Below are positions 1-59,647 of a stretch of DNA of 64,000 nt, piece after piece. Below the pieces are notes generated by a model. That model ran no database searches. It had not been told where the DNA came from and saw only the letters and a list, made by a program, of their open reading frames with translations. The stretch comes from Convolutriloba macropyga. Lineage: Eukaryota. Where the stretch lies: the NCBI RefSeq assembly GCF_964194025.1, contig NC_134470.1:26288001-26352000 (forward strand). Direction: 5' to 3'. A program made the translations under genes and the position numbers. How positions within the stretch are numbered: position 1 is the first letter of the stretch; each line of letters starts with the position of its first letter.

Positions 1-289
1 GTTGGCATTTGTTTTGCCAGTTTATTTTTTGTTGCGCGTTGCGAGCGTTCCTCTCTCTCTGATTGTGCGGAAGCACCAATTATTGTTTCTTCATATATTG
101 GCTCAAGAGGAAGTTCCACTATCTCGGTTTTGGGTCCAAGTAGCGTATCGAGAATAATATTCTCTTTTGCCAACAGTGCCATTTTATATTGCACTCTCCC
201 TTTCTCCCAGCGAAGAGGAGGGTCAGGTGTAGGTTTGTCCCAGAAAGGGTCGATTCCGAGAGGTGTTCGTTTAGTTGCTGGCTGCACCA
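1..289 (-). mobile_element. Ty3/Gypsy copy A: PBS and 5' part of gag, running off the window edge
   Basis: Near-identical to 6363-6668 and to the reverse complement of 7427-7722. PBS TGGTGCAGCCAGCA at 289-276; gag N-terminus MVQPATKRTPLGIDPFWDKPTPDPPLRWEK. Confidence 0.9.
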
Positions 290-678
290 TGTCGTACTCT
301 ATTTATTTAGAGTAGCTATTTTCACTGCGAGTACGCTTAAAGTTATTTAGATAATGATTCGCGGAGCGGAATCCTGATTTGAGTTTGTATCGCTTACTTG
401 CGGAGCGGGATTTAAGAAGGGAATCGTTAAACTGAATTCGGATTGCAAAGTTAAGAGAATGAAGGTAAATGTTGCACAACAAAACGTGAAGGCGTGATCA
501 GACATGTCTGATCACAAAGCGGGAAACCAAGAAGGAAATGACAACAGATCACGAGGTATTGATTGAACAAATGATGAACACTTTACGAAGGGCAAAATAA
601 GAGAACTAAATTAAGACATCGTATTTAATATGAACTGCACTAAATAAATAACTAAGGATGATATCCTTGGTTATCACA
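290..678 (-). repeat. 389-bp LTR serving as both the 3' LTR of copy B and the 5' LTR of copy A
   Basis: TG...CA termini (TGTGATAACC...AATAAATAGAGTACGACA on the minus strand). Preceded by a PPT and followed by a PBS. About 17 substitutions versus the LTR at 6669-7057 (manual count). Confidence 0.92.
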
Positions 679-686
679 TACCCCTG
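679..686 (-). promoter_or_regulatory. Polypurine tract of copy B
   Basis: CAGGGGTA lies immediately 5' of the LTR-initial TG on the minus strand, after the integrase stop and an AT-rich 3' UTR. Confidence 0.7.
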
Positions 687-881
687 ACGTTGACAAAGAA
701 AATTGTGATTATAACAATTTTTGAATGTATAAATTAATAACAATATTTACAAATTAGTACTTGGTCCCCGGTTAAATAAATAATAAAGATATATTTACTG
801 GTTATCATAACTAAAAATAAATACTATTAAATTATGAAGTGTTTAATTGTCACAGTTTTGAATAAGTTCAGTTTCAATAGC

Positions 882-2751
882 TCATTCGTTTTTCTCGGAA
901 TTTTCTCCTTCGGCCTCAAGCACCGTCATCGACCTAACTAGCGTTGGAGTATCCTTTTCGAGGAGGGAAGGGTTTCGCGAGGCGGGTGGCGAAACTTCTC
1001 CAATACTTGGTGAGATATTTATCTCAGCAGGTTGGCTTTCTGCGATATGCTGGACTGACTCTACAATGGACTCGTGTGGAGGTTGGACATTTTCCACGTC
1101 ACCCGCTCGTCGAGGTCGTTTGGATGGTGGTAAGATTGTGGAGTCTGGGGAGGTTTTCTCAAAGCCGTAATACGAGGGACTTCGTTGATTGCGGTCCGAT
1201 GATCTCGTTGGGTGTGCCGCTGCGACAGACGTATTTGTTGGAGCAGTGGTTAGTTGTTCGCCATTCGAGATGGTGCCGGCATCTGGTTGTGGATTTCGGA
1301 TGGCGAGGAAGTTAGGGATTTTGGGGATTCGCCCTCGCGTAGCACGTGAAATATTTGATTTGGATGAGGATACTCCGCTGCCCGGGTCAAGTTTTCGGTT
1401 TTTCATCTTTTTATCCCCTTTTTGTTTTCGTGTATACTCCTTCACGAGACTTTGTATCAGTTTTTCTACAGACTTCCCACTCGATCTTGGTGCCCGGCGG
1501 TCCGCGTACGCTTTCAATGGGGTTTGACGCTCCAGTTGTTTGCCAAACTTCGCAATATCACTATTGCGTACAGTTACTATGGGTTTCCCGGGTTCCTTGA
1601 TTGATGAAGTCGCCGGACTAACCTTCAAGATATGTGAGCCCGGCGCGAGGACTTCATATAGTCCCTCCAAGTTCTTCTTTGATCGTTTCTTCCCATGGAT
1701 TTTTCGGGCTAGGTTAAGTTCTACTACTCTTTCTTTCAAAGGAATTGGGCGAAATGCTTTTGTTTTCAGAAAACGTGATTCGCCGTCTGTGCTGGCCCTT
1801 TTTCTGATTTTCGCCTCGCGCGTTGCTCGTGACATGCCAACTTTAACTTCAATGTCACTGCGGTAGCCGTTCACCCACTTGTCGTCTGGTAAGATTTCTT
1901 CCGGCATCACTGTTTCTTCATCTAAATAATAGTTTATAATATTTTCATATGTGAGACTTGATAACTTAGGTTTTGTCGATATCACGCTCAGCGGGGTATT
2001 AAGTTTTCTTCCAAAATGTGCTTCGAAGGGCGAGATCTTTGTTGTTCTTTGTTTACATATTCGCAATTGATGTATTATTATCATTAATGCATGCTTTACA
2101 TGAAAGGCGTTAGTAGACGATTTTTCTTCTTTAATACATGCGAGTCTATTCTTAATTGTTTGAATAAGTCTTTCTACCAAACCAATAGCACGATGATCGT
2201 TCACTGGAGCTTCAATTATGTCTATTATTTTTATTACAAAAGGTCTTTACTTGATTGCCAACGAGACACTTTGCTTGATCTAAACGGATAGACCGTGGAA
2301 TCCCTTGATTTTCAATATAAATGTCCAAAAATTTTATAACATTTGGTCCATTAGCTTTGTCATAAATACATGCAGTGGGGTATTTAGAAAAATGGTCAAT
2401 TGCTGCTAAGAGGTAAACTTCATTCTCCTTTTCGTCAAAAAATGGGCCGCCAAAATCAATCTGAATTTCTTGATTTGGTTCAACACACGTTGTGTGAGGA
2501 TTAAACTGTTTAGCAGGAAAAACACGTTTAAGGTTCCTACCAATCACCGTGCAGGGCTTGCACTCAGTAGCCTTAACTATCAGTTCGTGATGCATGTATG
2601 GCCACCAGCCATGCGTGACCATACATATCAAACCCCATGTGCCCGGGTGGCTGGAGTGGATGTCATCTGTCATTGCCTCTCGCAAGACGTTTGGTATGGC
2701 GATCTTTTCATCAATGCATACACACCCGGAACGTACACGGAGGTCCCTTCA
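882..2751 (-). pseudogene. Integrase of copy B (HHCC zinc domain, DDE core, long basic S/P-rich C-terminus), frameshifted near 2212
   Basis: HSSHPG...CKPC; IQIDFGGP; IRLDQAK; GLVERLI. Split between ORFs 2212..2685 and 882..2204. Confidence 0.92.
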
Positions 2752-3651
2752 ATAGGAATGTATGTAGGGATTGAGGGCTTTGAGTCTACTTTCATTGTTA
2801 GTTAAAAAGCAATCCCGGACCTCTTTCAATACTGCGTCCTTGCTAGTCAGTGATGCAATCAATGACTTATTGAAAATTTTTGATACGATTTAGTCGAATG
2901 TTGGCAGAATGAATGCGGAATGGGCGTGAGAGGGGTACTTGCGTTTGACTGACGAGTGAGACGGAGAGGTTGGAGTTGTTTGTGGGGAACTAGCTGCGCG
3001 GGTGTTGTTTGAGGATTCATGGTGTTTATATAATTGATTTCTGATGACAATTTAGATGAAATTGGATTTTTGGGCTTGAAAATACGCGACTGAATTGTAG
3101 AAGGACTAGAGGCAAAAAGCACCGATTTTATTTTTGAGTAATGACTTTTAATGACATTTGAGGAATGTCTCCTAATTGGCAGGATTTTAGATTGAATAAT
3201 TTGAGGTTCGCGCTGCGCGAGAGCTAATTCATTCCGAATTTGGAATAACTCTTTACTCTTACTGGTATTTTGCTGAGCGAGAGAAGTGCTAAACGGACTT
3301 TGCCGCGCGGGGCTACATAATTTGAATTGTTTAAATTACAATTGGTATTTGAGGCAAGCTTTCGCGGAGCGGGGAAATTGTAGTAAACATGTTTGTATAC
3401 TCGTGTTGCGGGTGTGCTAATTAAGTTTACTGCCTTATTGTTGGCTTCTATTTTAAGTGTGATTTGTAATGCGGGATCATGTGCCTCAATTTTAGGTGTG
3501 ATTTGCAATGCGGGATTATGTGCCTCAATTTTAGGTGTGATTTGCAATGCGGGTTTGAGTTGTATTAATAATTGGTGTAAATGAGTTGCAGGTTTTGTTT
3601 GATTTAATTCCAATGAATTAATGGATGTAGAGATTAATTTTAATTTTGCCA

Positions 3652-5652
3652 CTATGAATTCCTCATCATATATCGAGATTTTTTGTAGCTTTTTTGAGAC
3701 GGGTGTCTAGAAATATAATCAACTAGGCCCATTTTCGCCCCAGGGAGATGTTCAATATTGAATTGAAATGGGAGCAAACGATCGATCCAGCGGGTTAATC
3801 TACTGTTGTAAGATTTATTCGATCTATTTTCTTTCATGTTAGATAGCAGGGCACGATGATCCGTAATTACTGTAAAATTTTTTCCGTACAAATAATTTTT
3901 TAAATATTCAATTGACCAAACTACACCTAGGAGTTCAAGTTCATTAACGCTGTAGCGTTCTTCGCAAGAATTTAGGAATCTAGACGTAAATGCGATTGGT
4001 TTCCACCCAGCAACTGTCAATTGTTCAAGAGCTGCTCCGAGACCAGAACGTGACGCATCGCATTTCACGCGTGTTTCGAGTTGCGGGTTATAGTGACTAT
4101 TTGCGGTTGCGTTCGCTATGCGACTTTTTAATTCATTGAAACAGTTCTCGTGTTCCGCTGTCCAGAGAAAGTTTGACAACTTTTTCAGTAAGGGACGGAG
4201 AGGATGGCTAATTTGAGCGAGATTAGGAATGAATTTATCAATGTAATGAACTGACCCCAAAAAAGAGCGGAGTTTCTTTAGAATTTTTGGGGCGGGGAGT
4301 GATAATATTGCAGCCGTTTTGCTTTCAAGTGGTGAGATACCCAATTGCGAGATATGGTATCCTAACCAATCAACTTCTAGCTTTCCAAAATGACATTTAG
4401 GAAGATTTACCCTAAGATTTTCATCATCTAAACGTTGAAGACAATTCAGACCATAACTTTTGTGTTCTTCCAGAGATCCTTTACTAACTATCAAAATATC
4501 ATCTAAAAAACAGTATGTAACTTTTAGACCAATTAGGGTATAGTCCATAGCTTTTTGGAATTCTGGTGGCATATCTGTGAGCCCGTAAAATCCTGTTTGG
4601 AATCTGTATGTGCCGGTCATGTCACCACTAATTATGTTAAAATTACAGTGATTAGCTGTGTTAACGTCTAAATTTAATTGGCTGTATCCGTATTTTAAAT
4701 CAATCGTAGAGAAATACGATGTATTATGCGACGCGGGAGCTCTTATTTGTTGAGATATAGATTCGATTAGCGTATCGATATTTGGCATCTGATATTTGTT
4801 TTTGTGAATGGCTTTATTTAATACTTTTGAATCCAGTGCTAGCTTGATCGTTTGATCTTTCTTTACAGTGACCACGATTGGTGATATGAAATATTTATCA
4901 GGACAGCTTGAAAGTTTTATAATATGTTTTTCGTCTAGCAATTTGTTAAGTTCAATAATGACTTTTTCCTGCAAATTAATTGGAATACGTATACCTTTTT
5001 GATGTCTAGGTTGGAAATCTTTGTGAAACTTAGATTCTGCAACATGATTTTTGGATCCTCCAATACGCGAAAACAATTCAGGAAAAGTTTTTGCGATTTG
5101 TTCTTTGAATTCTGGAAATAAAATGTTGTTGACTCGATTACCTTTTTGAGATGTAGATTGAGTCACTGCTAATCCAAGTTTGTCAAACAAGTCACAGCCA
5201 ATTAGGGACTTTAGTCCGTTAGCTACAACAGTGAATATCGCTACATCACAAGTCCAACCCTTGCTCGTGATTGGTGCTTGTATCTTTCCTTCGACCTGAA
5301 TTGGTTCATTTGAGAATGTCCGGAGTTGTGGAGTCACTGTTTCGTTGATCCAGAATGCCGGAGGACTGCTCTGTACCACTTGCGATGCGAGTGATTGGTT
5401 GAGAATGCTGCTTGTGCTTCCGGAGTCCACGAGCAGTGTAGTGTTAATATTGCCAATCTTGACGGGCATATTGAGTGGTTCTGCTTTCTCTACCGCATTT
5501 TCGATCACTGCGACCGTATTGTCGTCTCCACTACTATAGTCCGATTCGTAGAGCTTGGCTGGTTGTACGAAATTAACTGAATCTTCAGGATGCGGTTCTT
5601 CTTCCACGACGCTCACCATGTTTTTCTTTGAATTTTGTGGCTTTGTATTCAC
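3652..5652 (-). pseudogene. pol of copy B: aspartic protease, reverse transcriptase, RNase H
   Basis: LLVDSGS protease motif; STIDLKY and FLDDIL RT motifs; CDASRSGLGA and TDHRAL RNase H motifs. Confidence 0.93.
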
Positions 5653-6669
5653 GTTCTGTTGTTTTCTACAAACTTTCGCAAAATGATTTAGAAGTACACA
5701 ATTGTTGCAAGTTTTGCCTTTTGCGATGCAATTTTCACGGTGACTTGGGAGCCAAATTCCTCCGCAAATTGAGCAGAAGAGTGTCGAACGGTTGTTTTGT
5801 CTCGAGACATTATTTGGATTTTGCCATTACAGGATTCAAGAATTATTAGCGAATTGGACCGCATTGACATTTGTTGTAACAACAATCTTGTTGTGTTGCT
5901 GGATTTGACATTGGTTTCGCATTCCGAGTTCCAAGTTGATTGCTAGCTCTTATGCCTGACACGGTTCAACGGTTTGTTTGAGGAGCTCCTTTTGAATTTC
6001 GGGATCCATCAGATTAGTGATAAAGACGTCACGTATCAGTGTTTCTTCCTTATTCTCGAAATCGCAGTTCTCTGCTAATTCCTTTAATTTTCCATAGAAG
6101 TGTTCGACAGTTTCCCCTCTAAGCTGCTTTGTGATCAAGAAGACGTGACGATCGAATGTTATGTTGCGAAGGCGGATGAATGCCTCCTCCACAATCTTCC
6201 AGAAGTCTATCGTGGCGAGAGTATCGATCAGGATGTGCGGATTCTTGCAGTTGAGAATGCGGCCACCTTCTATTCCGACGCATGGGTAGAGTAGGGAAAC
6301 AGATTTGCGGTCCGCCAGTGACCATGGTTTGTCGCCACACATGATACCCACTTCAATGAGCCGTTGGCATTTGTTTTGCCAGTTCATTTTTTGTTGCGCG
6401 TTGCGAGCGTTCCTCTCTCTCTCTCTCTCTCTCTCTCTGATTGTGCGGAAGCACCAGTTATTGTTTCTTTATATAATGGCTCAAGAGGAATGGCTCCACC
6501 ATCTCGGGTTTGGGTCCACGTAGCGTATCGAGAATAATATTCTTTTTGCCAACTGTGCCAATTTATATTGCACTATCCCTTTCTCCCAGCGAAGAGGAGG
6601 GTCAGGTGTAGGTTTGTCCCAGAAAGGGTCGATTCCGAGAGGTGTTCGTTTAGTTGCTGGCTGCGCCAT
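5653..6669 (-). pseudogene. gag of copy B (capsid-like region plus two Cys/His knuckles), disrupted
   Basis: QLRGETVEHFYGKLKELAENCDF capsid-like motif; CSICGGIWLPSHRENC and CNNCVLLNHFAKVC knuckles. Several stops and an (AG)13 expansion. Confidence 0.88.
6655..6668 (-). promoter_or_regulatory. Primer-binding site of copy B (tRNA-Ser-like)
   Basis: TGGCGCAGCCAGCA directly after the LTR-terminal CA, complementary to a tRNA 3' end ...UGCUGGCUGCGCCA, which resembles animal tRNA-Ser. Confidence 0.75.
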
Positions 6670-7057
6670 GTCGTACTCTATTTATTTAGAGTAGCTATTT
6701 GCACTGCGAGTACGCTTAAAGTTATTTAGATAATGATTCGCGGAGCGGAATCCTGATTTGAGTTTGTATCGCTTACTTGCGGAGCGGGATGCAAGAAGAG
6801 AATCGTTAAACTGAATTCGGAGTGCAAAGTTAAGAGAATGAAAGTAAATGTTGCACAACAAAACGTGAAGGCGTGATCAGACATGTCTGATAACGAAGCG
6901 GGAAACCAAGATTGAAATGACAACAGATCACAAGGTATTGATTGAACAAATGATGAACACTTTATGAAAGGCAAAATAAGAGAACTAAATTAGGACATCG
7001 TATTTAAAATGAACTGCACTAAATAAATTACTAAGGATGATATCCTTGGGTATCACA
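6669..7057 (-). repeat. 5' LTR of copy B (389 bp)
   Basis: TG...CA termini, AATAAA near the 3' end, matches 290-678. Confidence 0.92.
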
Positions 7058-7058
7058 A

Positions 7059-7426
7059 TGCGATACCCAAGGATATCATCCTTAGTAATTTATTTAGTGC
7101 AGTTCATATTAAATACGATGTCTTAAGTTAGTTCTCTTATTTTGCTGTTCATAAAGTGTTGATCATTTGTTCAATCAATACCTCGTGATCTGTTGTCATT
7201 TCCTTCTTGGTTTCCCGCTTCGTTCGCCTTCAAGTTTTGTGCAACATTTACTTTCATTCTCTTAACTTTGCAATCCGAATTCAGTTTAACGATTCTCTTC
7301 TTAAATCCCGCTCCGCAAGTAAGCGATACAAACTCAAATCAGAATTCCGCTCCGCCAATCGTTATCTAAATAACTTTCAGCGTACTCGCAGTGCAAATAG
7401 CTACTCTAAATAAATAGAGTACGACA
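7059..7426 (+). repeat. 5' LTR of copy C (368 bp, 21-bp internal deletion)
   Basis: TGCGATACCC...GAGTACGACA. Reverse complement of 6669-7057 except for loss of the internal palindrome near 7224. Confidence 0.92.
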
Positions 7427-7440
7427 TGGCGCAGCCAGCA
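7427..7440 (+). promoter_or_regulatory. Primer-binding site of copy C (tRNA-Ser-like)
   Basis: TGGCGCAGCCAGCA directly after the LTR. Confidence 0.75.
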
Positions 7441-10400
7441 ACTAAACGAACACCTCTCGGAATCGACACTTTCTGGGACAAACCTACACCTGACCCTCCT
7501 CTTCGCTGGGAGAAAGGGAGAGTGCAATATAAATTGGCACTGTTGGCAAAAGAGAATATTATTTTCGATACGCTACTAGGACCCAAACCCGAGATGGTGG
7601 AACTTCTTCTTGAGCCATTATATAAAGAAACAGTAATTGGTGCTTCCGCACAATCAGAGAGAGAGAGAGAGGAACGCTCGCAACGCGCAACAAAAAATGA
7701 ACTGGCAAAACAAATGCCAACGGCTCATTGAAGTGGGTATCATGTGTGGCGACAAACCGTGGTCACTGGCGGACGGCAAATCTGTTTCCCTACTCTACCC
7801 AAGCGTCGGAATAGAAGGTCGCCGCATTCTCAACTGCAAGAATCCGCACATCCTGATCGATACTCTCGCCACGGTAGACTTCTGGAAGATTGTGGAGGAA
7901 GCATTCATCCGCCTTCGCAACATAACATTCGATCGTCACGTCTTCTTGATCACAAAGCAGCTTAGAGGGGAAACTGTCGAACACTTCTATGGAAAATTAA
8001 AGGAATTAGCAGAGAACTGCGATTTCGAGAATAAGGAAGAAACACTGATACGTGACGTCTTCATCACTAATCTGATGGATCCCGAAATTCAAAAGGAGCT
8101 CCTCAAACAAACCGTCGAACCGTGTAAGGCATTAGAGCTAGCAATCAACATGGAACTCGGAATGCGAAACCAATGTCAAATCCAGCAACACAACAAGATT
8201 GTTGTTCCAACTAATGTCAATGCGGTCCAATTCGCTAATAATTCTCGAATCCTGTAATGGCAAAATCCAAATAATGTCTCGAGACAAAACAACCGTTCGA
8301 CACTCTTCTGCTCAATTTGCGGAGGAATTTGGCTCCCAAGTCACCGTAAAAATTGCATCGCAAAAGGCAAAACTTGCAACAATTGTGTACTTCTAAATCA
8401 TTTTGCGAAAGTTTGTAGAAAACAAAAGAACGTGAATAAAAAGCCACAAAATTCAAAGAAAAACATGGTGAGCGTCGTGGAAGAAGAACCGCATCCTGAA
8501 GATTCAGTTAATTTCGTACAACCAGCCAAGCTCTACGAATCGGACTACAGTAGTGGAGACGACAATACGGTCGCAGTGATCGAAAATGCGGTAGAGAAAG
8601 CAGAACCACTCAATATGCCCGTCAAGATTGGCAATATTAACACTACACTGCTCGTGGACTCCGGAAGCGCAAGCAGCATTCTCAACCAATCACTCGCATC
8701 GCAAGTGGTACAGAGCAGTCCTCCGGCATTCTGGATCAACGAAACAGTGACTCCACAACTCCGGACATTCTCAAATGAACCAATTCAGGTCGAAGGAAAG
8801 ATACAAGCACCAATCACGAGCAAGGGTTGGACTTGTGATGTAGCGATATTCACTGTTGTAGCTAACGGACTAAAGTCCCTAATTGGCTGTGACTTGTTTG
8901 ACAAACTTGGATTAGCAGTGACTCAATCTACATCTCAAAAAGGTAATCGAGTCAACAACATTTTATTTCCAGAATTCAAAGAACAAATCGCAAAAACTTT
9001 TCCTGAATTGTTTTCGCGTATTGGAAGATCCAAAAATCATGTGGCAAAATCTAAGTTTCACAAAGACTTCCAACCTAGACATCAAAAAGGTAGATGTATT
9101 TCAATTAATTTGCAGGAAAAAATCAATATTGAATTTAACAAATTGCTAGACGAAAAACATATTATAAAACTTTCAAGATGTCCTGATAAAAATTTCATAT
9201 CACCAATAGTGGTCACTGTAAAGAAAGATCAAACGATCAAGCTTGCGTTGGATTCAAAAGTATTAAATAAAGCCATTCACAAAAACAAATATCAGATGCC
9301 AAATATCGATACGCTAATCGAATCTATATCTCAACAAATAAGTGCTCCCGCGTCGCAAAATACAACGTATTTCTCTACGATTGATTTAAAATACGCATAC
9401 AGCCAATTAACTTTAGACGTTAACACAGCTAATCACTGTAATTTTAACATAATTAGTGGTGACATGACCGGCACATATAGATTCCAAACGGGATTTTGCG
9501 GGCTCACAGATATGCCACCAGAATTCCAAAAAGCTATGGACTACACCCTAATTGGTCTAAAAAATACATACTGTTTTTTAGATGATATTTTGATAGTTAG
9601 TAAAGGATCTCTGGAAGAACACAAAAGTTATGTACTGAATTGTCTTCAACGTTTAATGATGAAAATCTAAGGATAAATCTTCCTAAATGTCATTTTGGAA
9701 AGCTAGAAATTGATTGGTCAGGATACCATATCTCGCAATCGGGTATCTCGCCACTCGAAAGCAAAACAGCTGCAATATTATCACTCCCCGCCCCAAAAAC
9801 TCGGCTCTTTTTTGGGGTCAGTTCATTACTTTGGTAAATTCATTCCTAATCTCGCTCAAATAAGCCATCCTCTCCGTCCCTTATTGAAAAAGTCGTCAAA
9901 ATTTCTCTGGAAAGCGGAACACGAGAACTGTTTCAATGAAATAAAAAATCGCATAGCGAACGCAACCGCAAATAGTCACTATAACTCGCAACTCGAAACA
10001 CGCGTGAAATGCGATGCGTCACGTTCTGGTCTCGGAGCAGCTCTTGAACAATTGACAGTTGCTGGGTGGAAACCAATCGCATTTACGTCTAGATTCCTAA
10101 ATTCTTGCGAAGAATGCTACAGCGTTAATGAACTTGAACTCCTAGGTGTAGTTTGATCAATTGAATATTTTAAAAATTATTTGTAGGGAAAAAATTTTAC
10201 AGTAATTACGGATCATCGTGCCCTGCTATCTATCATGAAAGAAAATAGATCGAATAAATCTTACAACAGTAGATTAACCCGCTGGATCGATCGTTTGCTC
10301 CCATTTCAATTCAATATTGAACATCTCCCTGGGGCGAAAATGGGCCTAGTTGACTATATTTCTAGACACCCGTCTCAAAAAAGCTACAAAAAATCTCGAC

Positions 10401-10518
10401 ATATGATGAGGAATTCATAGTGGCAAAATTAAAATTAATCTCTACATCCATTAATTCATTGGAATTAAATCAAACAAAACCTGCAACTCATTTGCACCAA
10501 TTATTAATACAACTCAAA

Positions 10519-10630
10519 CCCGCATTGCAAATCACACCTAAAATTGAGGCACATAATCCCGCATTGCAAATCACACCTAAAATTGAGGCACATTATCCCG
10601 CATTACAAATCACACTTAAAATAGAAGCCA
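10519..10630 (+). repeat. Three tandem 39-bp coding repeats (PALQITPKIEAHN) in the RNase H-integrase spacer; mirrored at ~3442-3554
   Basis: cccgcattgcaaatcacacctaaaattgaggcacataat at 10519, 10558 and 10597. Confidence 0.9.
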
Positions 10631-13600
10631 ACAATAAGGCAGTAAACTTAATTAGCACACCCGCAACACGAGTATACAAACATGTTTACTACAATTTCCC
10701 CGCTCCGCGAAAGCTTGCCTCAAATACCAATTGTAATTTAAACAATTCAAATTATGTAGCCCCGCGCGGCAAAGTCCGTTTGGCACTTCTCTCGCTCAGC
10801 AAAATACCAGTAAGAGTAAAGAGTTATTCCAAATTCGGAATGAATTAGCTCTCGCGCAGCGCGAACCTCAAATTATTCAATCTAAAATCCCGCCAATTAG
10901 GAGACATTCCTCAAATATCATTAAAAGTCATTACTCAAAAATAAAATCGGTGCTTTTTGCCTCTAGTCATTCTACAATTCAGTCGCGTATTTTCAAGCCC
11001 AAAAATCCAATTTCATCTAAATTGTCATCAGAAATCAATTATATAAACACAATCAGTAACACAATGCCCTCTAAGAAACGTATCACTCGCGTTCGTTTTA
11101 ATGATACATCTCGCACTGCAAATCAACAGTCATCCAGTGAAAACACAACAGGCTCCGCAAGTCAGCGACTTTATTCACCGAGCACTTCTCGCGCCGCAAA
11201 TCAACGCAATGAATCCTCAAACGACACCCGCGCAGCTAGTTCCCCACCAACAACTCCAACCTCTCCGTCTCACTCGTCAGTCAAACGCAAGTACCCCTCT
11301 CACGCCCAGCCCACATGTGCCAACAATTGACTATATCGTATCGAAAATTTTCAATAAGTCATTGATTGCATCACTGACTAGCAAGGACGCAGTAATGAAA
11401 GAGGTCCGGGATTGTATTTTAACTAACAATGAAAGTAGACTCAAAGCCCTCAATCCCTACATACATTCTTATTGAAGGGACCTCCGTGTACGTTCCGGGT
11501 GTGTATGCATTGATGAAAAGATCGCCAAACCAAACGTCTTGCGAGAGGCAATGACAGATGACATCCATTCCAGCCACCCGGGCACATGGGGTATGATATG
11601 TATGGCCACGCATTGCTGGTGGCCATATATGCATCGCGAACTGATAGTTAAGGCTACTGAGTGCAAGCCCTGCACGGTGATTGGTAAGAACCTTAAATGT
11701 GTTTTTCCTGCTAAAGAATTTAATCCTCACACAACGTGTGTTGAACCAAATCAAGAAATTCAGATTGATTTTGGCGGCCCAATTTTTGACGAAAAGGGGA
11801 ATGAAGTTTACTTCTTAGCAGCAATTGACCATTTTTCCAAATATCCCACTGCATGTATTTATGACAAAGCTAATGGACCAAATGTTATAAAATTTTTGTA
11901 CATTTACATTGAAAATCACGGGACTCCACGGTCTATCCGTTTAGATCAAGCAAAGTGTTTCGTTGGCAATCAAGTAAAGACCTTTTGTAATAGAAATAAT
12001 AGACATAATTGAAACTCCAGTGAACGATCATCGTGCTATTGGTTTGGTAGAAAGACTTATTCAAGTAATTAAGAATAGACTCGCATGTATTAAAGAAGAA
12101 AAATCGTCTACTAACGCGTTTCATGTAAAGCATGCATTAATGATAATAATACATCAATTGCGAATATGTAAACAAAGAACAACAAAGATCTCGCCCTTCG
12201 AAGCACATTTTGGAAGAAAACTTAATACCCCGCTGAGCGTGATATCGACAAAACCTCACATATGAAAATATTGTAAACTATTATTTAGATGAAGAAACAG
12301 TGATGCCGGAAGAAATCTTACCAGACAAGGGGGTGAACGGCTACCGCAGTGACATTGAAGTTAAAGTTGGCATGTCATGAGCAACACGCGAGGCGAAAAA
12401 CAGAGAAAGGGCCAGCACAGACGGCGAATCACGTTTTCTGAAAACAAAAGCATTTCGCCCCATTTCTTTGAAAGAAAGAGCAGTAGAACTTAACCTAGCC
12501 CGAAAAATCCATGGGAAGGAACGATCAAAGAAGAACTTGGAGGGACTATATGAAATCGTCGCGCCCATCTTGAAGGTTAGCCCGACGACTTCAACAATCA
12601 AGGAACCCGGGAAACCCATAGTAACGGTACGCAATAGTTATATTGCGAAGTTTAGCACACAACTGGAGCGTCAAACCCCATTGAAAGCGTACGCGGACCT
12701 CCGGGGACCAAGATCGAGTGAGAAGTCTGTAGAAGAACTGATACAAAGTCACGTGAAGGAGTATACACGAAAACAAAAAGGGGATAAACACCGAAAACGT
12801 GACCCGGGCAGCGGAGTATCCTCATCCAAATCAAATATTTCAAGTGCTATGCGAGGGCGAATCCCCAAAATCCCTAACTCCCTCGCCATCCGAAATCCAC
12901 AACCAGATGCCGATTGGTGATAACACAACAGATAACTCAATTATCGGCGACGAGTTCAAACTGCTCCCAAAGCAGATTTGTGATATGTTGTGCAAACATT
13001 AGAACAGGATATTGAATCAGGGCATATTTCAAATCTGCCTAATATTTTGGGAATTCGATTACCTTGCAGTCAACCTTAAAATTGATTTCTTGTCCTTTTC
13101 ACATTGGTTTGTATATTCAAATTCTGAAAAAATGAACTCTTTAAAAATATATCCGACAGATTGCCAGATAATAGCCGCCAACTAGACTGCTGTGACCTGT
13201 TTTAAATGCTAAAGCAAGTTAAAAAAGCAAATTTTCAAAAAGAAGAATTTGAGACTAATTTTTTGTTCTTAATGTGAAAAAAGATTTGAAAAGTTTTTTT
13301 AAGTCCCATCAATTGATTGAGGCCTGCTACGCAATATGGTTTTGTGTTAGTTACACTCTATTGATCTTCAATCCCAGGTGTAGGTTTAAAATGAATATGA
13401 GTTCGAGCATATAGGAGTCATTTTTTTAATTGAAGTACGTCATGTATGATCAGAAGTTTATCTTGCCGTTATTCTAAAAAGTAAAAAAAAAACATATTGA
13501 GAAATGACGTCAGCCGTACAAATTTATCTGCAAAGTGATTAAAAAATCCCTGAAAAATCAAAAGTCAAACGGTCATAGGAAGCAGTGACGGAAACGACTC

Positions 13601-13970
13601 ATTGAAAAACAAACTAAGATGAGAGCAATAATTGCCTCGTTATCACTACCCAGATATAAAAAATTGACCTCAGACACCATTTTTTTGATATTTTCATCAA
13701 CTTTTTTCAGTTAAACACTGTCAGTTAACTCCTGAATAATCTAAATTTCTAGAAATTCGTTACTAAAACAGAGCAGTACTAAAAATACGCACAACCTTAT
13801 TTGTTTATTAAGCGTCTGTTGTTAAGATTCAAGGTTTCAAAAACAAAAAGGTAACTAGATTCTTCTGCTGAAACAGAAAATAAACAGTCTAAAGTGGGAT
13901 GAATTGCCGCGACAGACGGTTACAATTTTACAATGGGTGTATCTTAGAAATGATTAAAGTTAAAAGAACT

Positions 13971-14040
13971 TCGCCCGCGCAGGGGTTCGAACCCCCGTAA
14001 GCCGGTTGGCAGTCTGACATCTTAACCTCTTAACCAAAGC
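13971..14040 (-). pseudogene. Degenerate tRNA-like sequence (GCC-type anticodon loop): tRNA pseudogene or SINE head
   Basis: Minus strand shows A-box TGGTTAAGAGG, loop CTGCCAA and T-arm GGGGGTTCGAACCCCT. The acceptor stem pairs poorly. Confidence 0.6.
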
Positions 14041-16457
14041 TAAAATTGCTTTTATTTCGCTCACAATCGCTTTCATGAATGAACTTTATTTTTGAAGGAG
14101 ACCAAATTGTATAACTCAGTAAGAAGAGCTAATGTGAGAGGTCACTCAGAAAATCGGAGAATTTTCTAGAACCAAAAAGCGAAAACGGTCCAGCGAAAAT
14201 TTTGCATTGAAAACAAACCGTTGTTCACATTAATTCCTTCAAATTTCATTCGGGAGCATTTATACAAATAAATCACGCACATTTTTACTTACATTTCACC
14301 AATTTCTACGTCAAAAAATGTCAAATCTTTACGGGCAAAAAACAAAAAAAGCAAAGTATGTAAGCAGATTGTAGCTAACAAAAAAAATCAAACAAAAGAG
14401 CAAAAAATAAGCTACCAGACCCAAAAACATTACTGCAACGCATTGGATTGACTAATAAGTCCTATTTTGACCCAGTTCAATTTTCTAAAAAACAGTTTGA
14501 CAGAAAACTCAAACCGGAGTTTAAAGAAGTAAAGCAAAAACTTTTCGAAACTTAGTTTGTGAAGAATTACAGCAAACAGCAAAAAAAACGTTCTGTAGCA
14601 GAGTTTTGTGAAAAAGTACTGCATAAGTCAATTTGAAGAAAAATAGAGAACGTTCCTTTTTTATTTCTTCAGAAGCCTGTCCCATTCTAATTGAACGTTT
14701 TTTTTTGCAAATAGGACCGACCGACCAGAACTTCAAAATTCCATTAAAGCTTTTGCAAATCTCACTCAGTGTTCTTTTTATCGGCAAATTGAAAATATCT
14801 CGTTAAATGAAGGAACACACTCGATATTTTAGGTTATTTGCAAATTTCAAGATACAAATTGAAAACAAAGATTGGTTTCAATTTCTTTTGAAAATGGAGC
14901 TGGCGCTAGTGTGATGGCGTGCTTGTGCATCAAATTTGCACGCGATTAAGGTTAAATGGGCATTTTTTGGAAATTCTATTTTATAATACAGAAATTTGGA
15001 GTAACGATGACGTTAATAGAAAGCTATTTAAAAACAATGCAACCCGTCTAATTAGCAGTAAACAGCGAAAATTTCAATGACGCGCCTGTAAATAACGTGG
15101 TAACTATGCTCTTTGACATATTGAAAGCTAATTAGGTATAAAAAAAAACTTTTTCGTACTATAGTGCAACTAATGTATTAAATTACAGCCAGACTTTCTG
15201 TTTAAACAGTTTTCAAACTTAGAGATTTTTCATCGGTTTTTGACTAAACAAATTGTCTATCTCCCAATTGCCCTGAAAATTTTCAAACACAGATCCCTGT
15301 CTCATGTCACGAAGAAAATGTTTCAAATCTAATAGCAGTTAAAAAATAGCTCATGACTCGCCATTTATTTCATTGTCATAAAAGCCATCCTGCTAATGAT
15401 AATATGTTTTCTGCTTGTCATTCAAGAATGAATGCATCCGATTGCGAATATGTATGCTAACTTACATTAATATCCGGCTTTTGAAGCACTGCCTTGCTTA
15501 TTTAAAGAATATTAATAAAACGCGCGATACTCCCGCTAGGGCTATTATCTAAATGTATTTGCAATTAAGGTGAACTTTCTTGTGAAATCGTTTTCTTCGA
15601 TTAAACCTATTCCAGCTTCATCTCCCTGCTTATCTTTATATAAATCATTACCTCACGAAACTCATTTTGCATAACACAACATCAGATCAATAGCGTACAT
15701 CTTGAAAATTTTGGATGAAACTTGTTTTTGATTAACTCAGTGGAAGTTCTCAAGTTTTCATCTCTCGCCTTCGCGTTGGAATATATTATTATATTACCTT
15801 AGCATGCCCTTTGCTTATTTGGGATGCAAGTTTTTGAAATTCCACCGCTGACTGCAGATATTTTGCAGGAGTATCAAAATCTTATGAAATAAAACTGAGC
15901 TGATAACACAAGGTTCTGATTTTCTAATTTTGATTTTTTTCACAATTCAGTCAACGATGAAAATTTTATCTCACGCAATATTGGTTTCATAAAAACCAAG
16001 CTCTTGGTTAACAATTTTACGTTAATGAAAGAACTCGCTCTAATTACAGCTAAATTATTCATAAATTGAGATTCGAAATTATCTCAATCTTTTTGTGAGG
16101 TTAAGAAACCAAGATAGGACCAACAGTAGTTCTCCACAACTGCTTTGAAAATCCAACTTCTACAATCATACATTTTTTTAGGAATTTTAACTCATTTCCT
16201 TCGAGCCAGTGGATTGAGAATAAATTCAAATATTTGCGACTGAACTTAATTTTGCATTCAGGTGCCCTCAATTAATTTCAAGGAAGATTTTGGGGTTCTT
16301 TATTAGCTCAACAACATTGCAAATTTTCCACCCGAAAAGTATTAACTTCTCCATATTATTTGCAATTTTATGCTGTAGAGCCTCATTTTCTCTCATCATA
16401 CTTTTGGGGAAAATTGGGACAAATCAACCGTTGAATTAATCAATTAAAGGTTATCAA

Positions 16458-21840: not shown

Positions 21841-23868
21841 TAACTTTATTCCTTTGCTCATTCCTTGATATCCTATTTTTATTTTAAACTTTCCTTACCA
21901 GTTCCTTTTGTGTGCTATTTATATATACTAGCAGGCCCGCAAAAAGTATAACAAGATCATTTGAAAAATAGAAATTTTAAAATTCATTTTTTTTCTACCA
22001 CCTCGGGCTGGAACACATGCCCCTTGTTCAACAGCCATAGGTATTACGTTATGTTACCGATGTGTTTGGTTTAGTATAATACCTCCAAGTCACAGCAATT
22101 TTGTGTTCAACTTTTTTTGGCTTTGCTGACCCTTATAATTAGGGAGCGCTGAGACTTGTACAGATAACGAAATTCTACATAGTGTCGTAGCGTAACGCAT
22201 GTAATACGTTAGGCTGCATTTTTAAGGAGCGTAAAAAAGAGAAGAAACAAGATATGGAGGGAGAGAAAACAGAAAAAAGAAAAGAAAGACAGAAAGGAAT
22301 GAGAAAAGAAAGAAACGAAAGGGCAAAACGAGACAGAAGACAAAGGAAAGACAGAAAAAAGAAAAAGGGCAGCAAAACAGAACAGAAAAAAAAGAGAAAA
22401 GAAAGACAGAAAAGACAAAAGAAAGAGAAAAAAGACAAAAGAAAGGAAGAGAAAGAGAGAAAAGCAAGATAAAACGAGAGAAAAAATGACCGAAAAAAAA
22501 TACAAAATAGAGAGAAAAAATGGGTGGACGAAAGAGAAAAAAGTCAAAAAAGACAAAGGAAACAGAGAAAGAAAAACAAACGAAAAAAAGAGCAAGAGAG
22601 AAAGGAGGGAAAAGAAAAAAAGGACAGAAAAGAAAGAGAAAAGAAAGACAAACAAAAGAGAGAAAATAAATCGAGAAACGAAAGACAGAAAAGAAAGAGA
22701 CAAAAGACAGAAAAGCAAGAAAAGAGAAAAGCAAGAGAGAAGTAAGAGAGAAAAACAGGAGAGGGAGAGAAAAGGCGAAAGGAGAGAAAGAAGAGAAAGA
22801 GGGAGCAGAAAGAAACAAATGAGAAAAGAAAGGAAAAAAGAACAAAGGAAAGAGTTAAACTTTATTCCTTTGCTCATTCCTTGATATCCTATTTTTATTT
22901 TAAACTTTCCTTACCAGTTCCTTTTGTGTGCTATTTATATATACTAGCAGGCCCGCAAAAAGTATAACAAGATCATTTGAAAAATAGAAATTTTAAAATT
23001 CATTTTTTTTCTACCACCTCGGGCTGGAACACATGCCCCTTGTTCAACAGCCATAGGTATTACGTTATGTTACCGATGTGTTTGGTTTAGTATAATACCT
23101 CCAAGTCACAGCAATTTTGTGTTCAACTTTTTTTGGCTTTGCTGACCCTTATAATTAGGGAGCTCTGAGACTTGTACAGATAACGAAATTCTACATAGTG
23201 TCGTAGCGTAACGCATGTAATACGTTAGGCTGCATTTTTAAGGAGCGTAAAAAAGATAAGAAACAAGATATGGAGGGAGAGAAAACAGAAAAAAGAAAAG
23301 AAAGACAGAAAGGAATGAGAAAAGAAAGAAACGAAAAGGCAAAACGAGACAGAAGACAAAGGAAAGACAGAAAAAAGAAAAAGGGCAGCAAAACAGAACA
23401 GAAAAAAAAGAGAAAAGAAAGACAGAAAAGACAAAAGAAAGAGAAAAAAGACAACAGAAAGGAAGAGAAAGAGAGAAAAGCAAGATAAAACGAGAGAAAA
23501 AATGACCGAAAAAAAATACAAAATAGAGAGAAAAAATGGGTGGACGAAAGAGAAAAGTCAAAAAAGACAAAGGAAACAGAGAAAGAAAAACAAACGAAAA
23601 AAAGAGCAAGAGCGAAAGGAGGGAAAAGAAAAAAAGGACAGAAAAGAAAGAGAAAAGAAAGACAAACAAAAGAGAGAAAATAAATCGAGAAACGAAAGAC
23701 AGAAAAGAAAGAGACAAAAGACAGAAAAGCAAGAAAAGAGAAAAGCAAGAGAGAAGTAAGAGAGAAAAACAGGAGAGAGGGAGAGAAAAGGCGAAAGGAG
23801 AGAAAGAAGAGAAAGCAGAAAGAAACAAATGAGAAAAGAAAGGAAAAAAGAACGAAGGAAAGAGTTAA
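21841..23868. repeat. Near-identical tandem duplication of an ~1.02-kb unit (units start 21841 and 22857) in the PREB intron
   Basis: actttattcctttgctcattccttgatatcc recurs. Each unit has a degenerate tRNA-like head on the minus strand (~21997-22060) and a purine-rich block. Confidence 0.92.
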
Positions 23869-24830
23869 AAGAAAGAGAGAAAAGAGACAGAATTGAAAGA
23901 CAGGAAAGAGAAACGCAAGATAAAAGAAAAAGAAATCAAGAGAGAAAAGAAAGACAGAAAAAACACAAAAGAGCGGTAGAAAAAAGAAAAACAGAAAGGA
24001 AAGAGAAAAGAACGAGAAAATAAAGAGAAACGAAAGAGGAAAGAAAGAGAAAAGGAATGAAAACAAATAAAGGCAGGAAAAAACAGAAAAAAAACAGACA
24101 AAAGCAATAGAGAAAAGAAAGAAATGAAATACAGAAAAGAAAACGACAGAAAGCAAAAAAGAGAAAAAAGCAGAAAGAACAGAGAAAAAAAGAGAACGAG
24201 AGAGACAGAAAAGAAAAACAAAAAACGAAAAGAGGCAGAAAATACTATTAGAAAGAAATGAGAGAAAAAAAACCAAAGACAGAAAAGACAGAGAAAAGCG
24301 AGAGAAAAGAAAGACAGAAAAGTGAGCGAGCCAATAAAGAGAGAAGCTAAACAGGAACAAAAGAGAGAAAGGATGAGAAAGGATCAGAAAACATCAGAAA
24401 AGAGAAAACAAAGAGAAAAGAAAAGCAGAGAAGAAAGAGTACAGTAAGACAGAAGAGAAATAGAAAGGAAAGAGGAAAGAACGACAAGCTAAAAAGAGGA
24501 ACGAAAAAGAGAAAAACCATTAATAAACTAAAAGGAGAAAAGAAAGAATAAAAAAGAGAAAAACGCAGACAAGTACAGAAAAAGACAGAAAAAAAAGCAG
24601 AACGACAGAAAAGAGAGAGAGAAAAGCAAAAGAAAAGGAGATATAAAGAAAGGAAAAAAGAAAGAGAAAAGAAAGTGAAAGATAAAAAGCAGAAGAGACA
24701 GAGAAAAAGAAATATAACCAAAAACAAAACTAATGAAGGAGAAAATAAAAAGAAAAAAAAAGAGCAAAGGAAGAAAGAAACGGCAGAGAAAAGATATTCC
24801 TTCAAAAGTAAAAAGGAAAAATAGACCAAA
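22233..24830 (+). repeat. Aperiodic A/G-rich low-complexity tract (two blocks, ~2.2 kb total)
   Basis: Predominantly A and G with scattered C. All ORFs here are K/R/E- or F/L/S-only artefacts. Confidence 0.95.
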
Positions 24831-25098
24831 TTCTTCACATCCTCCTAACTTTTGAAAAAAAAACTGGCAACAAAAGATTCAGTTAATTAAACTTCAGTTG
24901 TTCAAAACTTTTATGAGAATGAGATCAAGCAAAACTGAAAACAAAAGAAGCAAAAGATTGTTTAAAAACTGGTCACGCAAACATTCAGCGTAAAAAGTTC
25001 CGATTAAAAACATCCGCGGTTATCCAGTCATTGACCTTTATTGCATAAATTACTTTTCGGTCTTCTGACTTTTTGACAATGACAGGTTTTCGTTCCTG

Positions 25099-26772
25099 GG
25101 CAGCTTTTCCAAAAATCAACCATTTTTACATTCAGTATTCAGTCACTGACCTTTACGGCATAGATAACTTTTCGGTCATTTGCTTTTTGGCAAGGTCAAG
25201 TTTTCAGTCATTGACCTTTTTCAAAATACATGCGAATCAAAACGCTTTGATGTATAGTTAAGAGGCCTTAAAACATGTGAAGATTAGGAGCTTAAACATG
25301 GTGGTATAGGTATTCGAATTACTTTTAATATGTAGATTGATAGAAGATAGATAGTGACAGTAGAAAGGCATGGAGCACAAAAAACTGTGAAAAAAAGAGG
25401 GAATTGGAGAAAGTGGAAACGGATGCGACGTTAATGGACAAAAATCCCTATAAATACGCGGCTCATCTGTTTCTTAGCTCAACTCATTGCACTTTTGCCT
25501 CTTAACTCACAGACCGCGGTTCGAACCCGACTGTTGCTTGTCGCTTTTTGCCGAAAAGCATGTTTAGGGGCTGTTAAAACATGTAAAGATTAGGAGCTTA
25601 AACATGGTGCCTTTTATGTCGACACTGAATTAATATATAGATATAGATGACAGCTTTTCGGTCATAGGCAGCTTTTCGAACAATGAACCATTTTTCCATT
25701 CAGTATTCAGTCATTGACCTTTACGGCATAGGTAACTCTTCGGTCATTTACTTTTTGGCAAGGTCAAGTTTTCGGTCATTGACCTTTTTCAAAATACATG
25801 CGAATCAAAACGCTTTGATGTATATTTAAGAGGCCTTGAAACATGTGAAGATTAGGAGCTTAAATATGGTGGTATAGGTATTCGAATTATTTTTAATATG
25901 TAGATTGATACAAGATAGATAGTGACAAAAAGGCATGGAGCACAAAAAATTGTGAAAAAAGGAGGGAATTGGAGAAAGTGGAAACAGATGCGACGTTAAT
26001 GGACAAAAATCCCGATAAATACGCGGCTCATCTGTTTCTTAGCTCAAGTCATTGCGCTTTTGCCTCTTAACTCACAGACCCCGGTTCGAATCCGACTGTT
26101 GCCAGTCGTTTTTTGCCGAAAAGCATGTTTAGGGGCTGTTAAAGCATGTAAAGATTAGGAGCTTAAACATTGTGCCTTTTATGTCGACACTGAATTAATA
26201 TATAGATATTGATGACAGCTTTTCGGTCATAGGCAGCTTTTCGAACAATGAACCATTTTTACATTCAGTATTTAGTCATTGACCTTTACGGCATAGGTAA
26301 CTTTTCGGTCATTTACTTTTTGGCAAGGTCAAGTTTTCGGTCATTGACCTTTTTCAAAATACATGCGAATCAAAACGCTTTGATGTATATTTAAGAGGCC
26401 TTGAAACATGTGAAGATTAGGAGCTTAAATATGGTGGTATAGGTATTCGAAGTATTTTTAATATGTAGATTGATACAAGATAGATAGTGACAGGAGAAAG
26501 GCATGGAGCACAAAAAATTGTGCAAATGAAGGGAATTGGAGAAAGTAGAAACGGATGCGACGCTAATGGACAAAAATCCCGATAAATACGCGGCTCATCT
26601 GTTTCTTAGCTCAACTCATTGCGCTTTTGTCTCTTAACTTACATACCCCGGTTCGAATCCCACTGTTGCCAGTCGCTTTTTGCCGAAAAGCATGTTTAGG
26701 GGCTGTTAAAACATGTAAAGATTAGGAGCTTAAACATGGTGCCTTTTATGTCGACACTGAATTAATATATAG
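25099..26772 (+). repeat. Three tandem ~565-bp units, each containing a tRNA-derived Pol III-like cassette
   Basis: Units start near 25099, 25666 and 26231. Each has A-box-like TAGCTCAA and B-box GGTTCGAA(C/T)CC between two copies of aaacatgt(g/a)aagattaggagcttaaacatggtg. Confidence 0.85.
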
Positions 26773-59487: not shown

Positions 59488-59647
59488 NNNNNNNNNNNNN
59501 NNNNNNNNNNNNNNNNNNNNNNNNNNNNNNNNNNNNNNNNNNNNNNNNNNNNNNNNNNNNNNNNNNNNNNNNNNNNNNNNNNNNNNNNNNNNNNNNNNNN
59601 NNNNNNNNNNNNNNNNNNNNNNNNNNNNNNNNNNNNNNNNNNNNNNN
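59488..59647. other. Assembly gap (160 N)
   Basis: Run of N. Confidence 1.

What the first reader, a model, noticed from the sequence alone, without database searches (positions are those of the whole stretch)
1277..12912. ~11.6-kb palindrome: two LTR retrotransposons fused head-to-head at their exact 5' termini with a 1-nt spacer
Seen: ...TATCACA-A-TGCGATA... at 7051-7065. Both LTRs start precisely at TG, separated by a single A (7058), with no host DNA or TSD. The arms (5781 and 5854 bp) carry private indels, so they are not identical mirror copies. The spacer A equals the base before TG at the PPT/LTR junction (GGGGTA|TG). Inference: end-joining of two linear cDNA U3 ends (one unprocessed), insertion targeted to an LTR end, or fold-back at an LTR-terminal break. 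The junction forms a divergent double promoter and a cruciform-prone site.
Basis: partly seen in the sequence, partly recalled or inferred. Interest (0 to 1): 0.75.

Follow-up and report, generated by a model that had tools for sequence, protein, structure and literature searches.

The report
End-joined head-to-head retrotransposon palindrome
Two dead copies of one Ty3/gypsy-type jumping gene lie back to back, joined exactly end to end with one spare base; the joint looks more like a DNA-repair scar than a normal insertion, and the two copies have since overwritten parts of each other.

Summary
Arms 1277-7057 (-) and 7059-12912 (+) are inverted copies of one Ty3/gypsy-like family, and both begin at the LTR's first base around a single A at 7058. 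They differ by 179 substitutions (3.1%) and 13 indels.

Corrections and additions:
- The true LTR is 389 nt (TG..CA, PBS TGGCGCAGCCAGC, 5-bp TSD in other copies).
- The left element is full length and runs through a shared LTR into a second, truncated unit.
- The right element is cut at element position e5781 and joined to unique DNA ("X").
- A second copy of that same junction plus X lies about 1.5 kb left of the window.
- Neither element has an integrase-type outer end or TSD. All four novel junctions show at most a few bases of microhomology.
- The head-to-head joint is unique in this 1.18-Gb assembly.
- Arm divergence is patchy in the way arm-to-arm gene conversion predicts, so the palindrome is old and probably real.

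Best reading (about 45%): two cDNA U3 ends were joined without integrase, as part of one complex break-repair episode. Rivals: a second integration overlapping the first LTR end, a chromosomal fold-back, or misassembly.

Public read data did not resolve the junction. This is a single locus of moderate interest.

The parts
1..290 (-). PBS (278-290, TGGTGCAGCCAGC) and leader of a second, truncated unit downstream of the shared LTR. It continues left of the window to C3:26287858 (element position e838), where it abuts the end of duplicate D1.
291..679 (-). 3' LTR of left element A, shared with the truncated second unit (LTR-sharing tandem). It is preceded by the PPT junction GGGGTA|TG at 680-685.
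680..6655 (-). Internal region of element A, now in several frames. Weak protease match, then RT-RNaseH in ORF 3652-5652, integrase core in ORF 2212-2685, and integrase C-terminal-like ORF 882-2204. A has a private deletion of about 157 nt at 3023.
6656..6668 (-). PBS of element A (TGGCGCAGCCAGC)
6669..7057 (-). 5' LTR of element A (389 nt; TGTGATACC...GAGTACGACA)
7058..7058 (.). Single-base spacer (A) between the two LTR 5' termini; centre of the palindrome
7059..7426 (+). 5' LTR of right element R (TGCGATACC...; 368 nt because of 18-nt and 3-nt deletions)
7427..7439 (+). PBS of element R
7440..12912 (+). Internal region of R, broken into many ORFs and truncated at element position e5781. The last ~600 nt of internal sequence and the 3' LTR are absent.
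12666..14297 (+). Duplicate D2: e5526-5781 plus mostly unique DNA X (12913-~14297; X contains one SINE-like interspersed repeat at ~13880-14270). Its copy D1 lies at C3:26286372-26287857 (L021:3372-4857) in the same orientation, 5.3-5.8% diverged, between a truncated high-copy repeat and the truncated second unit.
5059..5414 (.). Longest tract identical between the arms (356 nt). It lies within one of three low-divergence windows (e1201-2000, e3201-4000, e4801-5200) read as arm-to-arm gene-conversion patches.

Best explanation
Proposed explanation: the head-to-head joint is a scar of integrase-independent end joining between the U3 termini of two linear retrotransposon DNAs. These were either two cDNAs or one cDNA end copied back on itself. 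One end was trimmed to TG and the other kept one of the two cDNA-specific bases (TA) that precede TG.

The joint formed within one complex break-repair episode. In that episode retroelement DNA truncated at internal positions (e5781 on the right, e838 of a second unit on the left) was ligated to chromosomal DNA, and a 1.5-kb piece spanning the new e5781|X junction was copied to the other side.

Afterwards both copies decayed, and the two arms repeatedly converted each other, as arms of genomic palindromes do.

Shown:
- the anatomy and the uniqueness of the joint;
- the absence of a TSD;
- the junction signatures;
- equal ages of all the duplicates;
- the gene-conversion pattern.

Inferred:
- that the joined ends were extrachromosomal cDNA ends;
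- that the events were simultaneous.
For: - Exact TG termini with a 1-nt spacer; the only such joint in the assembly.
- Other copies have a 5-bp TSD with preference G-N-N-T-C (n=53; column P values 2e-8, 0.005, 7e-6). The target implied by a second integration, CACAA, ranks 704 of 1024 (likelihood ratio 0.29). A at -1 occurs in 15% of normal flanks, against 9 of 10 at the PPT junction.
- Neither element ends in an LTR with host flank. R stops at e5781|X; A runs through a shared LTR to e838|X-end.
- The four novel junctions have only about 0-3 nt of microhomology or a 1-nt insertion.
- The e5781|X junction exists only twice in the genome, both times at this locus.
- All duplicate pairs are about equally diverged and star-like against 11-19 outgroup copies. 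LTRs differ by 4.4-4.9%, leaders by 3.4-5.1%, the e5526-5781 copies by 4.0-6.6%, X by 5.8%, and unconverted arm windows by 4.5%.
- Precedent: Ty1 cDNA fragments of 140 bp to 5.6 kb are captured at yeast double-strand breaks by Ku-dependent NHEJ, many carrying cDNA-only extra bases (PMC1976456, PMC11372161).
Against: - This is a single locus, with no read-level confirmation of the joint. The available public runs are Logan contigs of short repeat fragments, and no listed piece bridges 7058.
- Cohesive joining of two integrase-processed U3 ends would predict a TA (2-nt) spacer, and blunt unprocessed ends a 4-nt spacer. One nucleotide needs extra trimming.
- The left block (a full element plus LTR plus 449 nt) is longer than one cDNA. 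It therefore needs an added LTR-LTR recombination step, or a chromosomal tandem as its source.
- Equal divergences have wide confidence intervals (for example 17 differences in 388 sites).
- No other U3-U3, U5-U5 or U5-U3 joint of this family is in the assembly, so there is no sign of a recurrent pathway.
Confidence: 0.45

Rival explanations
1. Second integrase-mediated insertion. Element R integrated next to the already resident element A at a 5-bp target made of the last 4 nt of A's LTR plus one host base. This left A's end intact and 1 nt between the elements. Later deletions and duplications removed R's 3' part and both outer flanks.
For: - Geometrically it gives exactly the observed joint.
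- Inverted tandems of LTR elements by double insertion are documented in Drosophila (Rover, PMC5932611).
- A and R belong to the same burst.
Against: - The documented double insertions keep the whole TSD in the joint. Here only 1 nt is present.
- CACAA fits the family's target preference poorly (likelihood ratio 0.29, rank 704 of 1024).
- There is no TSD or LTR outer end to support any integration.
- It needs several later independent rearrangements that all happen to have the same age as the elements.
- A random hit within 5 nt of one of a few hundred LTR ends in 1.18 Gb is very unlikely without a targeting mechanism.
Confidence: 0.2
2. Chromosomal fold-back or sister-chromatid fusion. A break at the outer edge of an integrated element was healed by fold-back priming or sister fusion. 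This made a palindrome whose arms were identical at birth, and later breakage and repair made the arms unequal.
For: - The arms are each other's closest relatives, and their divergence in unconverted windows (4.5%) equals that of A's own LTR pair (4.4%).
- 82% of arm differences are private to one arm, split 80 to 67.
- The locus shows further breakage and rejoining.
Against: - It requires a break within 1 nt of the LTR terminus.
- Mirroring stops at e5781. The left arm continues with canonical e5782-6378, an LTR and a second unit, while the right arm continues into X.
- The flanking 1.5-kb duplicates are direct, not mirrored.
- A 1-nt spacer is too short for a simple hairpin loop.
Confidence: 0.15
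3. Assembly artefact. The joint is a false join, from a chimeric read or from haplotypes placed in inverted orientation.
For: - There was no read-level check of the joint.
- Arm divergence could in principle be allelic in a very heterozygous animal.
Against: - A fold-back library chimera would give identical arms, but these differ by 3.1% and 13 indels.
- There is no gap or N run near the joint; the nearest Ns are at 59488-59647.
- The arms have different continuations beyond e5781 and different outer flanks, so they are not alleles.
- Shared-derived changes are 2.6-fold enriched exactly where the arms are most alike (P=0.0013). This indicates a long history of exchange between these two copies.
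Confidence: 0.07

Closest known systems
Inverted tandems of LTR retrotransposons formed by double insertion (Drosophila Rover pair; McGurk & Barbash 2018, PMC5932611)
   Same: Two copies of one LTR family in inverted orientation with intact facing termini.
   Different: Those keep the full target-site duplication (ATATAT) in the joint, and both elements are whole. Here there is 1 nt, a poor target fit, no outer TSDs and truncated outer ends.
Capture of Ty1 cDNA fragments at chromosomal double-strand breaks by NHEJ in yeast (PMC1976456; PMC11372161)
   Same: Retroelement DNA truncated at internal points. A natural cDNA end that may carry a cDNA-only extra base. Junctions with little or no homology, no TSD, and several fragments captured together.
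   Different: This is a germline locus of an animal, with pieces of 5.8 and 7.2 kb. There is a U3-to-U3 joint between two retroelement ends, plus a 1.5-kb templated or duplicated piece. Dependence on RT or Ku is untestable here.
2-LTR circle junctions of retroviruses and LTR retrotransposons (established knowledge; Ty circles in PMC4751563 seen only as a title)
   Same: End-to-end ligation of complete LTR termini with 0-4 extra bases, made by host end joining rather than integrase.
   Different: Circle junctions join U5 to U3 in direct orientation. This joint is U3 to U3, inverted. No U5-U3 joint of this family is in the assembly.
Genomic palindromes homogenised by arm-to-arm gene conversion (for example primate Y-chromosome palindromes; own knowledge)
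   Same: Inverted arms with patches of near identity, and with shared-derived changes concentrated in those patches.
   Different: The arms here are dead transposon copies with a 1-nt spacer, only 5.8 kb long and still 3% diverged overall.
Mu killer, an inverted duplication of MuDR that makes hairpin RNA and silences the family (Slotkin et al. 2005, cited in PMC11624286)
   Same: A natural inverted duplication of a transposon that could give a long hairpin RNA if transcribed across the centre.
   Different: No RNA evidence here. The two LTR promoters point outward, so a hairpin transcript would need read-through from outside.

Membership tests
Ty3/gypsy (Metaviridae-like) LTR retrotransposon | Direct LTRs ending TG...CA, with PBS after the 5' LTR and PPT before the 3' LTR | tested here: met
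   389-nt LTR TGTGATACC...GACA; PBS TGGCGCAGCCAGC; PPT junction CAGGGGTA|TG in 9 of 10 copies
Ty3/gypsy (Metaviridae-like) LTR retrotransposon | pol order PR-RT-RNaseH-IN | tested here: met
   RVT_1, RT_RNaseH and RT_RNaseH_2 in ORF 3652-5652, then rve in ORF 2212-2685. The protease match is only weak (RVP E=0.005, below Pfam's cut-off).
Ty3/gypsy (Metaviridae-like) LTR retrotransposon | Short target-site duplication at integrase-made insertions | tested here: met
   5-bp TSDs in other copies (GGACC, CCCGG, GTGGA, GGGGG, GTTTC). None at this locus.
Inverted tandem by double insertion | A full TSD copy kept between the two elements | tested here: not met
   1 nt between the termini
Inverted tandem by double insertion | Both elements complete, with LTR outer ends and host flanks | tested here: not met
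   R is cut at e5781; A runs into a truncated second unit
cDNA captured at a double-strand break by end joining | No TSD, internal truncation points, junctions with little or no microhomology or small insertions | tested here: met
   J1 (U|e5526), J2 (e5781|X), J3 (X-end|e838) and the centre all fit
cDNA captured at a double-strand break by end joining | Bases present only in cDNA (the TA between PPT and TG) at a natural end | tested here: inconclusive
   One A is present, but a single base matches by chance too often
cDNA captured at a double-strand break by end joining | Dependence on reverse transcription and on Ku / ligase IV | not testable with these tools
   Needs genetics
Fold-back / breakage-fusion-bridge palindrome | Mirror symmetry continuing outward from the centre until a later breakpoint on one side only | tested here: not met
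   Beyond e5781 the left arm carries canonical element sequence that the right arm never had, and the flanking duplicates are direct
Palindrome with arm-to-arm gene conversion | Patchy identity, with shared-derived changes enriched in the near-identical patches | tested here: met
   Heterogeneity chi-square P=3e-6. Identical tract of 356 nt, P=0.0015. Shared-derived changes 1.66% against 0.64% (P=0.0013). Private changes 0.46% against about 1.8% per arm (P=6e-9). Distance to outgroup copies is the same in both window classes.

The most novel reading that the evidence does not exclude
The locus is a germline fossil of an extrachromosomal retrotransposon DNA multimer in an animal. Three cDNA-derived units were assembled without integrase: one U3-to-U3 end joint and one LTR-sharing joint. 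The multimer was captured at a chromosomal break and has been kept since as a self-converting palindrome. This would show that the integrase-independent insertion route known from yeast experiments also operates in a metazoan germ line. A less likely extension (about 5%) is that read-through transcription makes a hairpin RNA that feeds silencing of the family.
Probability: 0.33. Interest if true: 0.55.

Novelty: new variant of a known kind. Interest (0 to 1): 0.36.

Why it matters
If the joint is an end-joining scar between retroelement cDNA ends, it is a natural record in an animal germ line of a route known mostly from yeast break-repair assays. In that route extrachromosomal cDNA is stitched together and into chromosomes by host repair rather than by integrase.

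It also gives a small, datable example of a transposon palindrome maintained by arm-to-arm gene conversion. Such a site is expected to be fragile (a 1-nt spacer and a strong hairpin), and it could seed hairpin RNA.

As a single, old, decayed locus with an unresolved mechanism, it is a curiosity rather than a new system.

Tried and rejected
- **Read support.** The only public runs (four of one study, plus one with almost no matching words) are Logan contigs. Laid on 6058-8057 they give short repeat fragments, with no listed piece bridging 7058 and only heterogeneous loose ends after 7057. The result is inconclusive.
- **Recurrence.** Exact-pattern scans for U3-U3 (spacer 0-14), U5-U5 and U5-U3 joints found only this locus. 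The 201-nt joint as a DNA query gave only half-length hits elsewhere.
- **Idea that the left duplicate's e5526-5781 piece is an older, unrelated fragment that guided a homology-driven return.** Weakened. The piece is star-like with the two arms and of the same age.
- **Idea that the DNA left of that duplicate is a nested transposon ending naturally at the junction, with the rest of a third element beyond it.** Rejected. Other copies of that high-copy repeat continue past the point, and no further element sequence lies within 25 kb.
- **Idea that U and X were neighbours before the event.** Not supported, for the same reason: the repeat is truncated there.
- **Idea that low-divergence windows are slow-evolving.** Rejected. 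Their distance to outgroup copies is the same as in the high-divergence windows.
- **Mosaic or recombinant origin of one arm.** Not supported. Both arms have the same distance profile to every other copy along their length.
- **An inverted pair of LTR starts on C7 (34212785/34213381).** It belongs to a relative only about 77% identical and consists of short LTR fragments. I did not pursue it.
- **Literature.** No paper in the searched library describes a TSD-less U3-U3 joint of LTR elements. That is not proof that none exists.
Full report
**Where it lies.** The window is G000:C3:26288001-26352000 of a 1.18-Gb assembly. Earlier unchecked notes of this scan call the organism an animal, in two cases an acoel worm.

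**The observation.** At 7049-7067 the sequence reads GGTATCACA-A-TGCGATACC. Inverted-repeat blocks tile 1277-7057 against 7059-12912, with 1 nt between the innermost arms. A global alignment of the arms has 5696 shared sites, 179 substitutions (3.14%) and 13 indels. One indel is a 157-nt segment that the left arm lacks and that the right arm and other copies have.

**The element.**
- Pfam finds RVT_1, RT_RNaseH and RT_RNaseH_2, then rve, preceded by a weak protease match. This is the Ty3/gypsy order. The ORF after the integrase core resembles integrase C-terminal regions.
- Comparison with twelve other loci of the family shows a true LTR of 389 nt (TGTGATACC...GAGTACGACA).
- The LTR is followed directly by the PBS TGGCGCAGCCAGC and preceded at the 3' LTR by CAGGGGTA. 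Ordinary copies have a 5-bp TSD.
- Both arms are broken into many frames.

**What surrounds the palindrome.** I call the left, minus-strand element A and the right, plus-strand element R, and give element positions as e1-e6767 on A.
- A is complete: 5' LTR 6669-7057, internal region, 3' LTR 291-679.
- After that LTR the sequence does not enter host DNA. It runs on through a second PBS and 449 nt of leader to e838, at C3:26287858, which is 142 nt left of the window. This is an LTR-sharing tandem whose second unit is cut off.
- R stops at e5781 (12912) and is joined to DNA "X" (12913-~14297). X is unique apart from one SINE-like repeat and is absent from other copies of the family.
- A second copy of e5526-5781 plus X ("D1", C3:26286372-26287857) lies in the same orientation immediately left of the truncated second unit.
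- The e5781|X junction occurs only at these two places in the genome.
- Left of D1 is a copy of a high-copy repeat cut at an internal point, since other copies continue past it. No further element sequence lies within 25 kb.

The layout is therefore: repeat(cut) | e5526-5781 + X | rc(e838...e1, e6378...e1) | A | e1...e5781 + X | unique DNA.

There are four kinds of novel junction. Each has only about 0-3 nt of possible microhomology or a 1-nt insertion, which is the signature of classical end joining. Neither element has an LTR outer end with a host flank, so nothing at this locus shows integrase at work.

**Uniqueness.**
- The 201-nt joint as a query finds full-length matches only at itself. 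Everywhere else only one half matches.
- Exact-pattern scans with spacers of 0-14 nt find this one head-to-head joint, no tail-to-tail joint and no U5-U3 joint.
- There are 111 exact LTR 5' ends. Two independent random insertions would not land within 1 nt of each other, so a mechanism is needed.

**Ages.**
- Substitution divergences are all alike:
  - A's two LTRs: 4.4%.
  - Either of them against R's LTR: 4.9%.
  - The three leader copies: 3.4-5.1%.
  - The three copies of e5526-5781: 4.0-6.6%.
  - X in D1 against D2: 5.8%.
- Polarised with 11-19 outgroup copies, each triple is star-like, with almost all changes private to one copy.
- In windows that show no sign of conversion, A and R differ by 4.5%. 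That equals A's own LTR pair and is less than the ~6% to the nearest other copies.
- So the insertion of A, the split of A from R, the second unit, the truncation of R and the duplication of D are not separable in time. This fits one episode better than a string of unrelated events, though the intervals are wide.

**Gene conversion between the arms.**
- Arm divergence ranges from 0.5% to 5.6% per 400 nt. Heterogeneity gives chi-square P=3e-6, and the longest identical tract is 356 nt (permutation P=0.0015).
- The low-divergence windows are not slow-evolving, because both arms are as far from outgroup copies there as elsewhere.
- In those windows, changes shared by A and R and absent from all eight other copies are 2.6-fold enriched (1.66% against 0.64%, P=0.0013). 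Private changes drop from about 1.8% to 0.46% per arm (P=6e-9). The total per lineage stays near 2.1-2.4%.
- That is what arm-to-arm conversion after partial divergence predicts.
- It argues that the two copies have been partners for a long time. Together with the 13 indels, the absence of Ns nearby and the different continuations of the arms, it argues against a fold-back read chimera or a haplotype misjoin.

**Integration or end joining?**
- From 53 non-PPT 5' flanks the family's target preference is G-N-N-T-C. At -5, G is 49%; at -2, T is 45%; at -1, C is 43%. The column P values are 2e-8, 0.005 and 7e-6.
- Suppose R had integrated so that its 5-bp target overlapped A's last four bases. The target would then be CACAA, which ranks 704 of 1024 under that preference (likelihood ratio 0.29).
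- The base at -1 would be A, seen in 15% of normal flanks but in 9 of 10 PPT junctions.
- These are modest odds against integrase.
- The documented double-insertion route to inverted LTR tandems leaves the whole TSD in the joint (PMC5932611), which is not the case here.
- Captured Ty1 cDNA at yeast breaks shows the features seen here: internal truncations, cDNA-only extra bases, little homology and several fragments at once (PMC1976456, PMC11372161).
- Two points count against a simple version of end joining:
  - Two integrase-processed U3 ends would anneal through their TA overhangs and give a 2-nt spacer, not 1.
  - The left block is longer than one cDNA, so it needs an LTR-LTR recombination step or a chromosomal tandem as its source.

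**Read evidence.** The only public runs are Logan contigs from one study. Laid on 6058-8057 they show very many short fragments of the family, heterogeneous loose ends after 7057 (other copies' flanks) and no listed piece across 7058.

**Structure and possible activity.** The central 161 nt fold as a near-perfect DNA hairpin (dG -76 kcal/mol, z = -25), so the site is cruciform-prone. The two LTRs point outward, so their own transcripts are not complementary to each other. A hairpin RNA would need read-through from outside. No RNA data were available.

**Verdict.**
- The most likely origin (about 45%) is integrase-independent joining of two U3 termini within one complex break-repair event, followed by decay and arm-to-arm conversion.
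- A second integration overlapping the first LTR end is about 20%.
- A chromosomal fold-back is about 15%.
- Misassembly is about 7%.

It is a new variant of known kinds (inverted transposon tandems, cDNA capture, converting palindromes), seen once, and of moderate interest.

Noticed in passing
L022 (C4485:26051-33925), L031 (C5:52075300-52085299), L032, L033: The family often sits in locally duplicated forms. L022 has an LTR-sharing tandem. L031 has a 2.9-kb tandem duplication spanning the 3' part of the element plus about 260 nt of flank (the same flank follows both LTR copies). L032 and L033 have internal duplications.
   Followed up: partly
C3:26284330-26286370 (left of the window; L021:1333-3369): A high-copy repeat (307 first-look candidates, 87-94% identical). 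It ends in short ~17-nt tandem motifs and is cut at an internal point where the left duplicate begins.
   Followed up: partly
window 21842-23848 and 25079-26795: Two satellite-like arrays, with periods of about 1016 nt and about 565-568 nt. They lie in a stretch with extreme strand asymmetry (AT skew 0.60 and GC skew 0.37 at 22001-24000).
   Followed up: no
window 35767-36073: Three tandem copies of a 102-nt unit.
   Followed up: no
window 56592-59250 and 61121-63912: Direct repeat blocks of about 2.7 kb, 4.4-4.7 kb apart (86-92% identical), with a 160-N run at 59488-59647 between them. Possibly the LTRs or a tandem of another element. The N run was left untouched.
   Followed up: no
C7:34212785-34213381 (L050): Short LTR fragments of a relative about 77% identical, in alternating orientation within about 600 nt. 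This is another small inverted structure built from LTR ends.
   Followed up: partly
53 LTR 5' flanks across the genome (L057-L116 and others): The family has a clear target preference, (A/T)(A/T)N|G-N-N-T-C|.
   Followed up: yes
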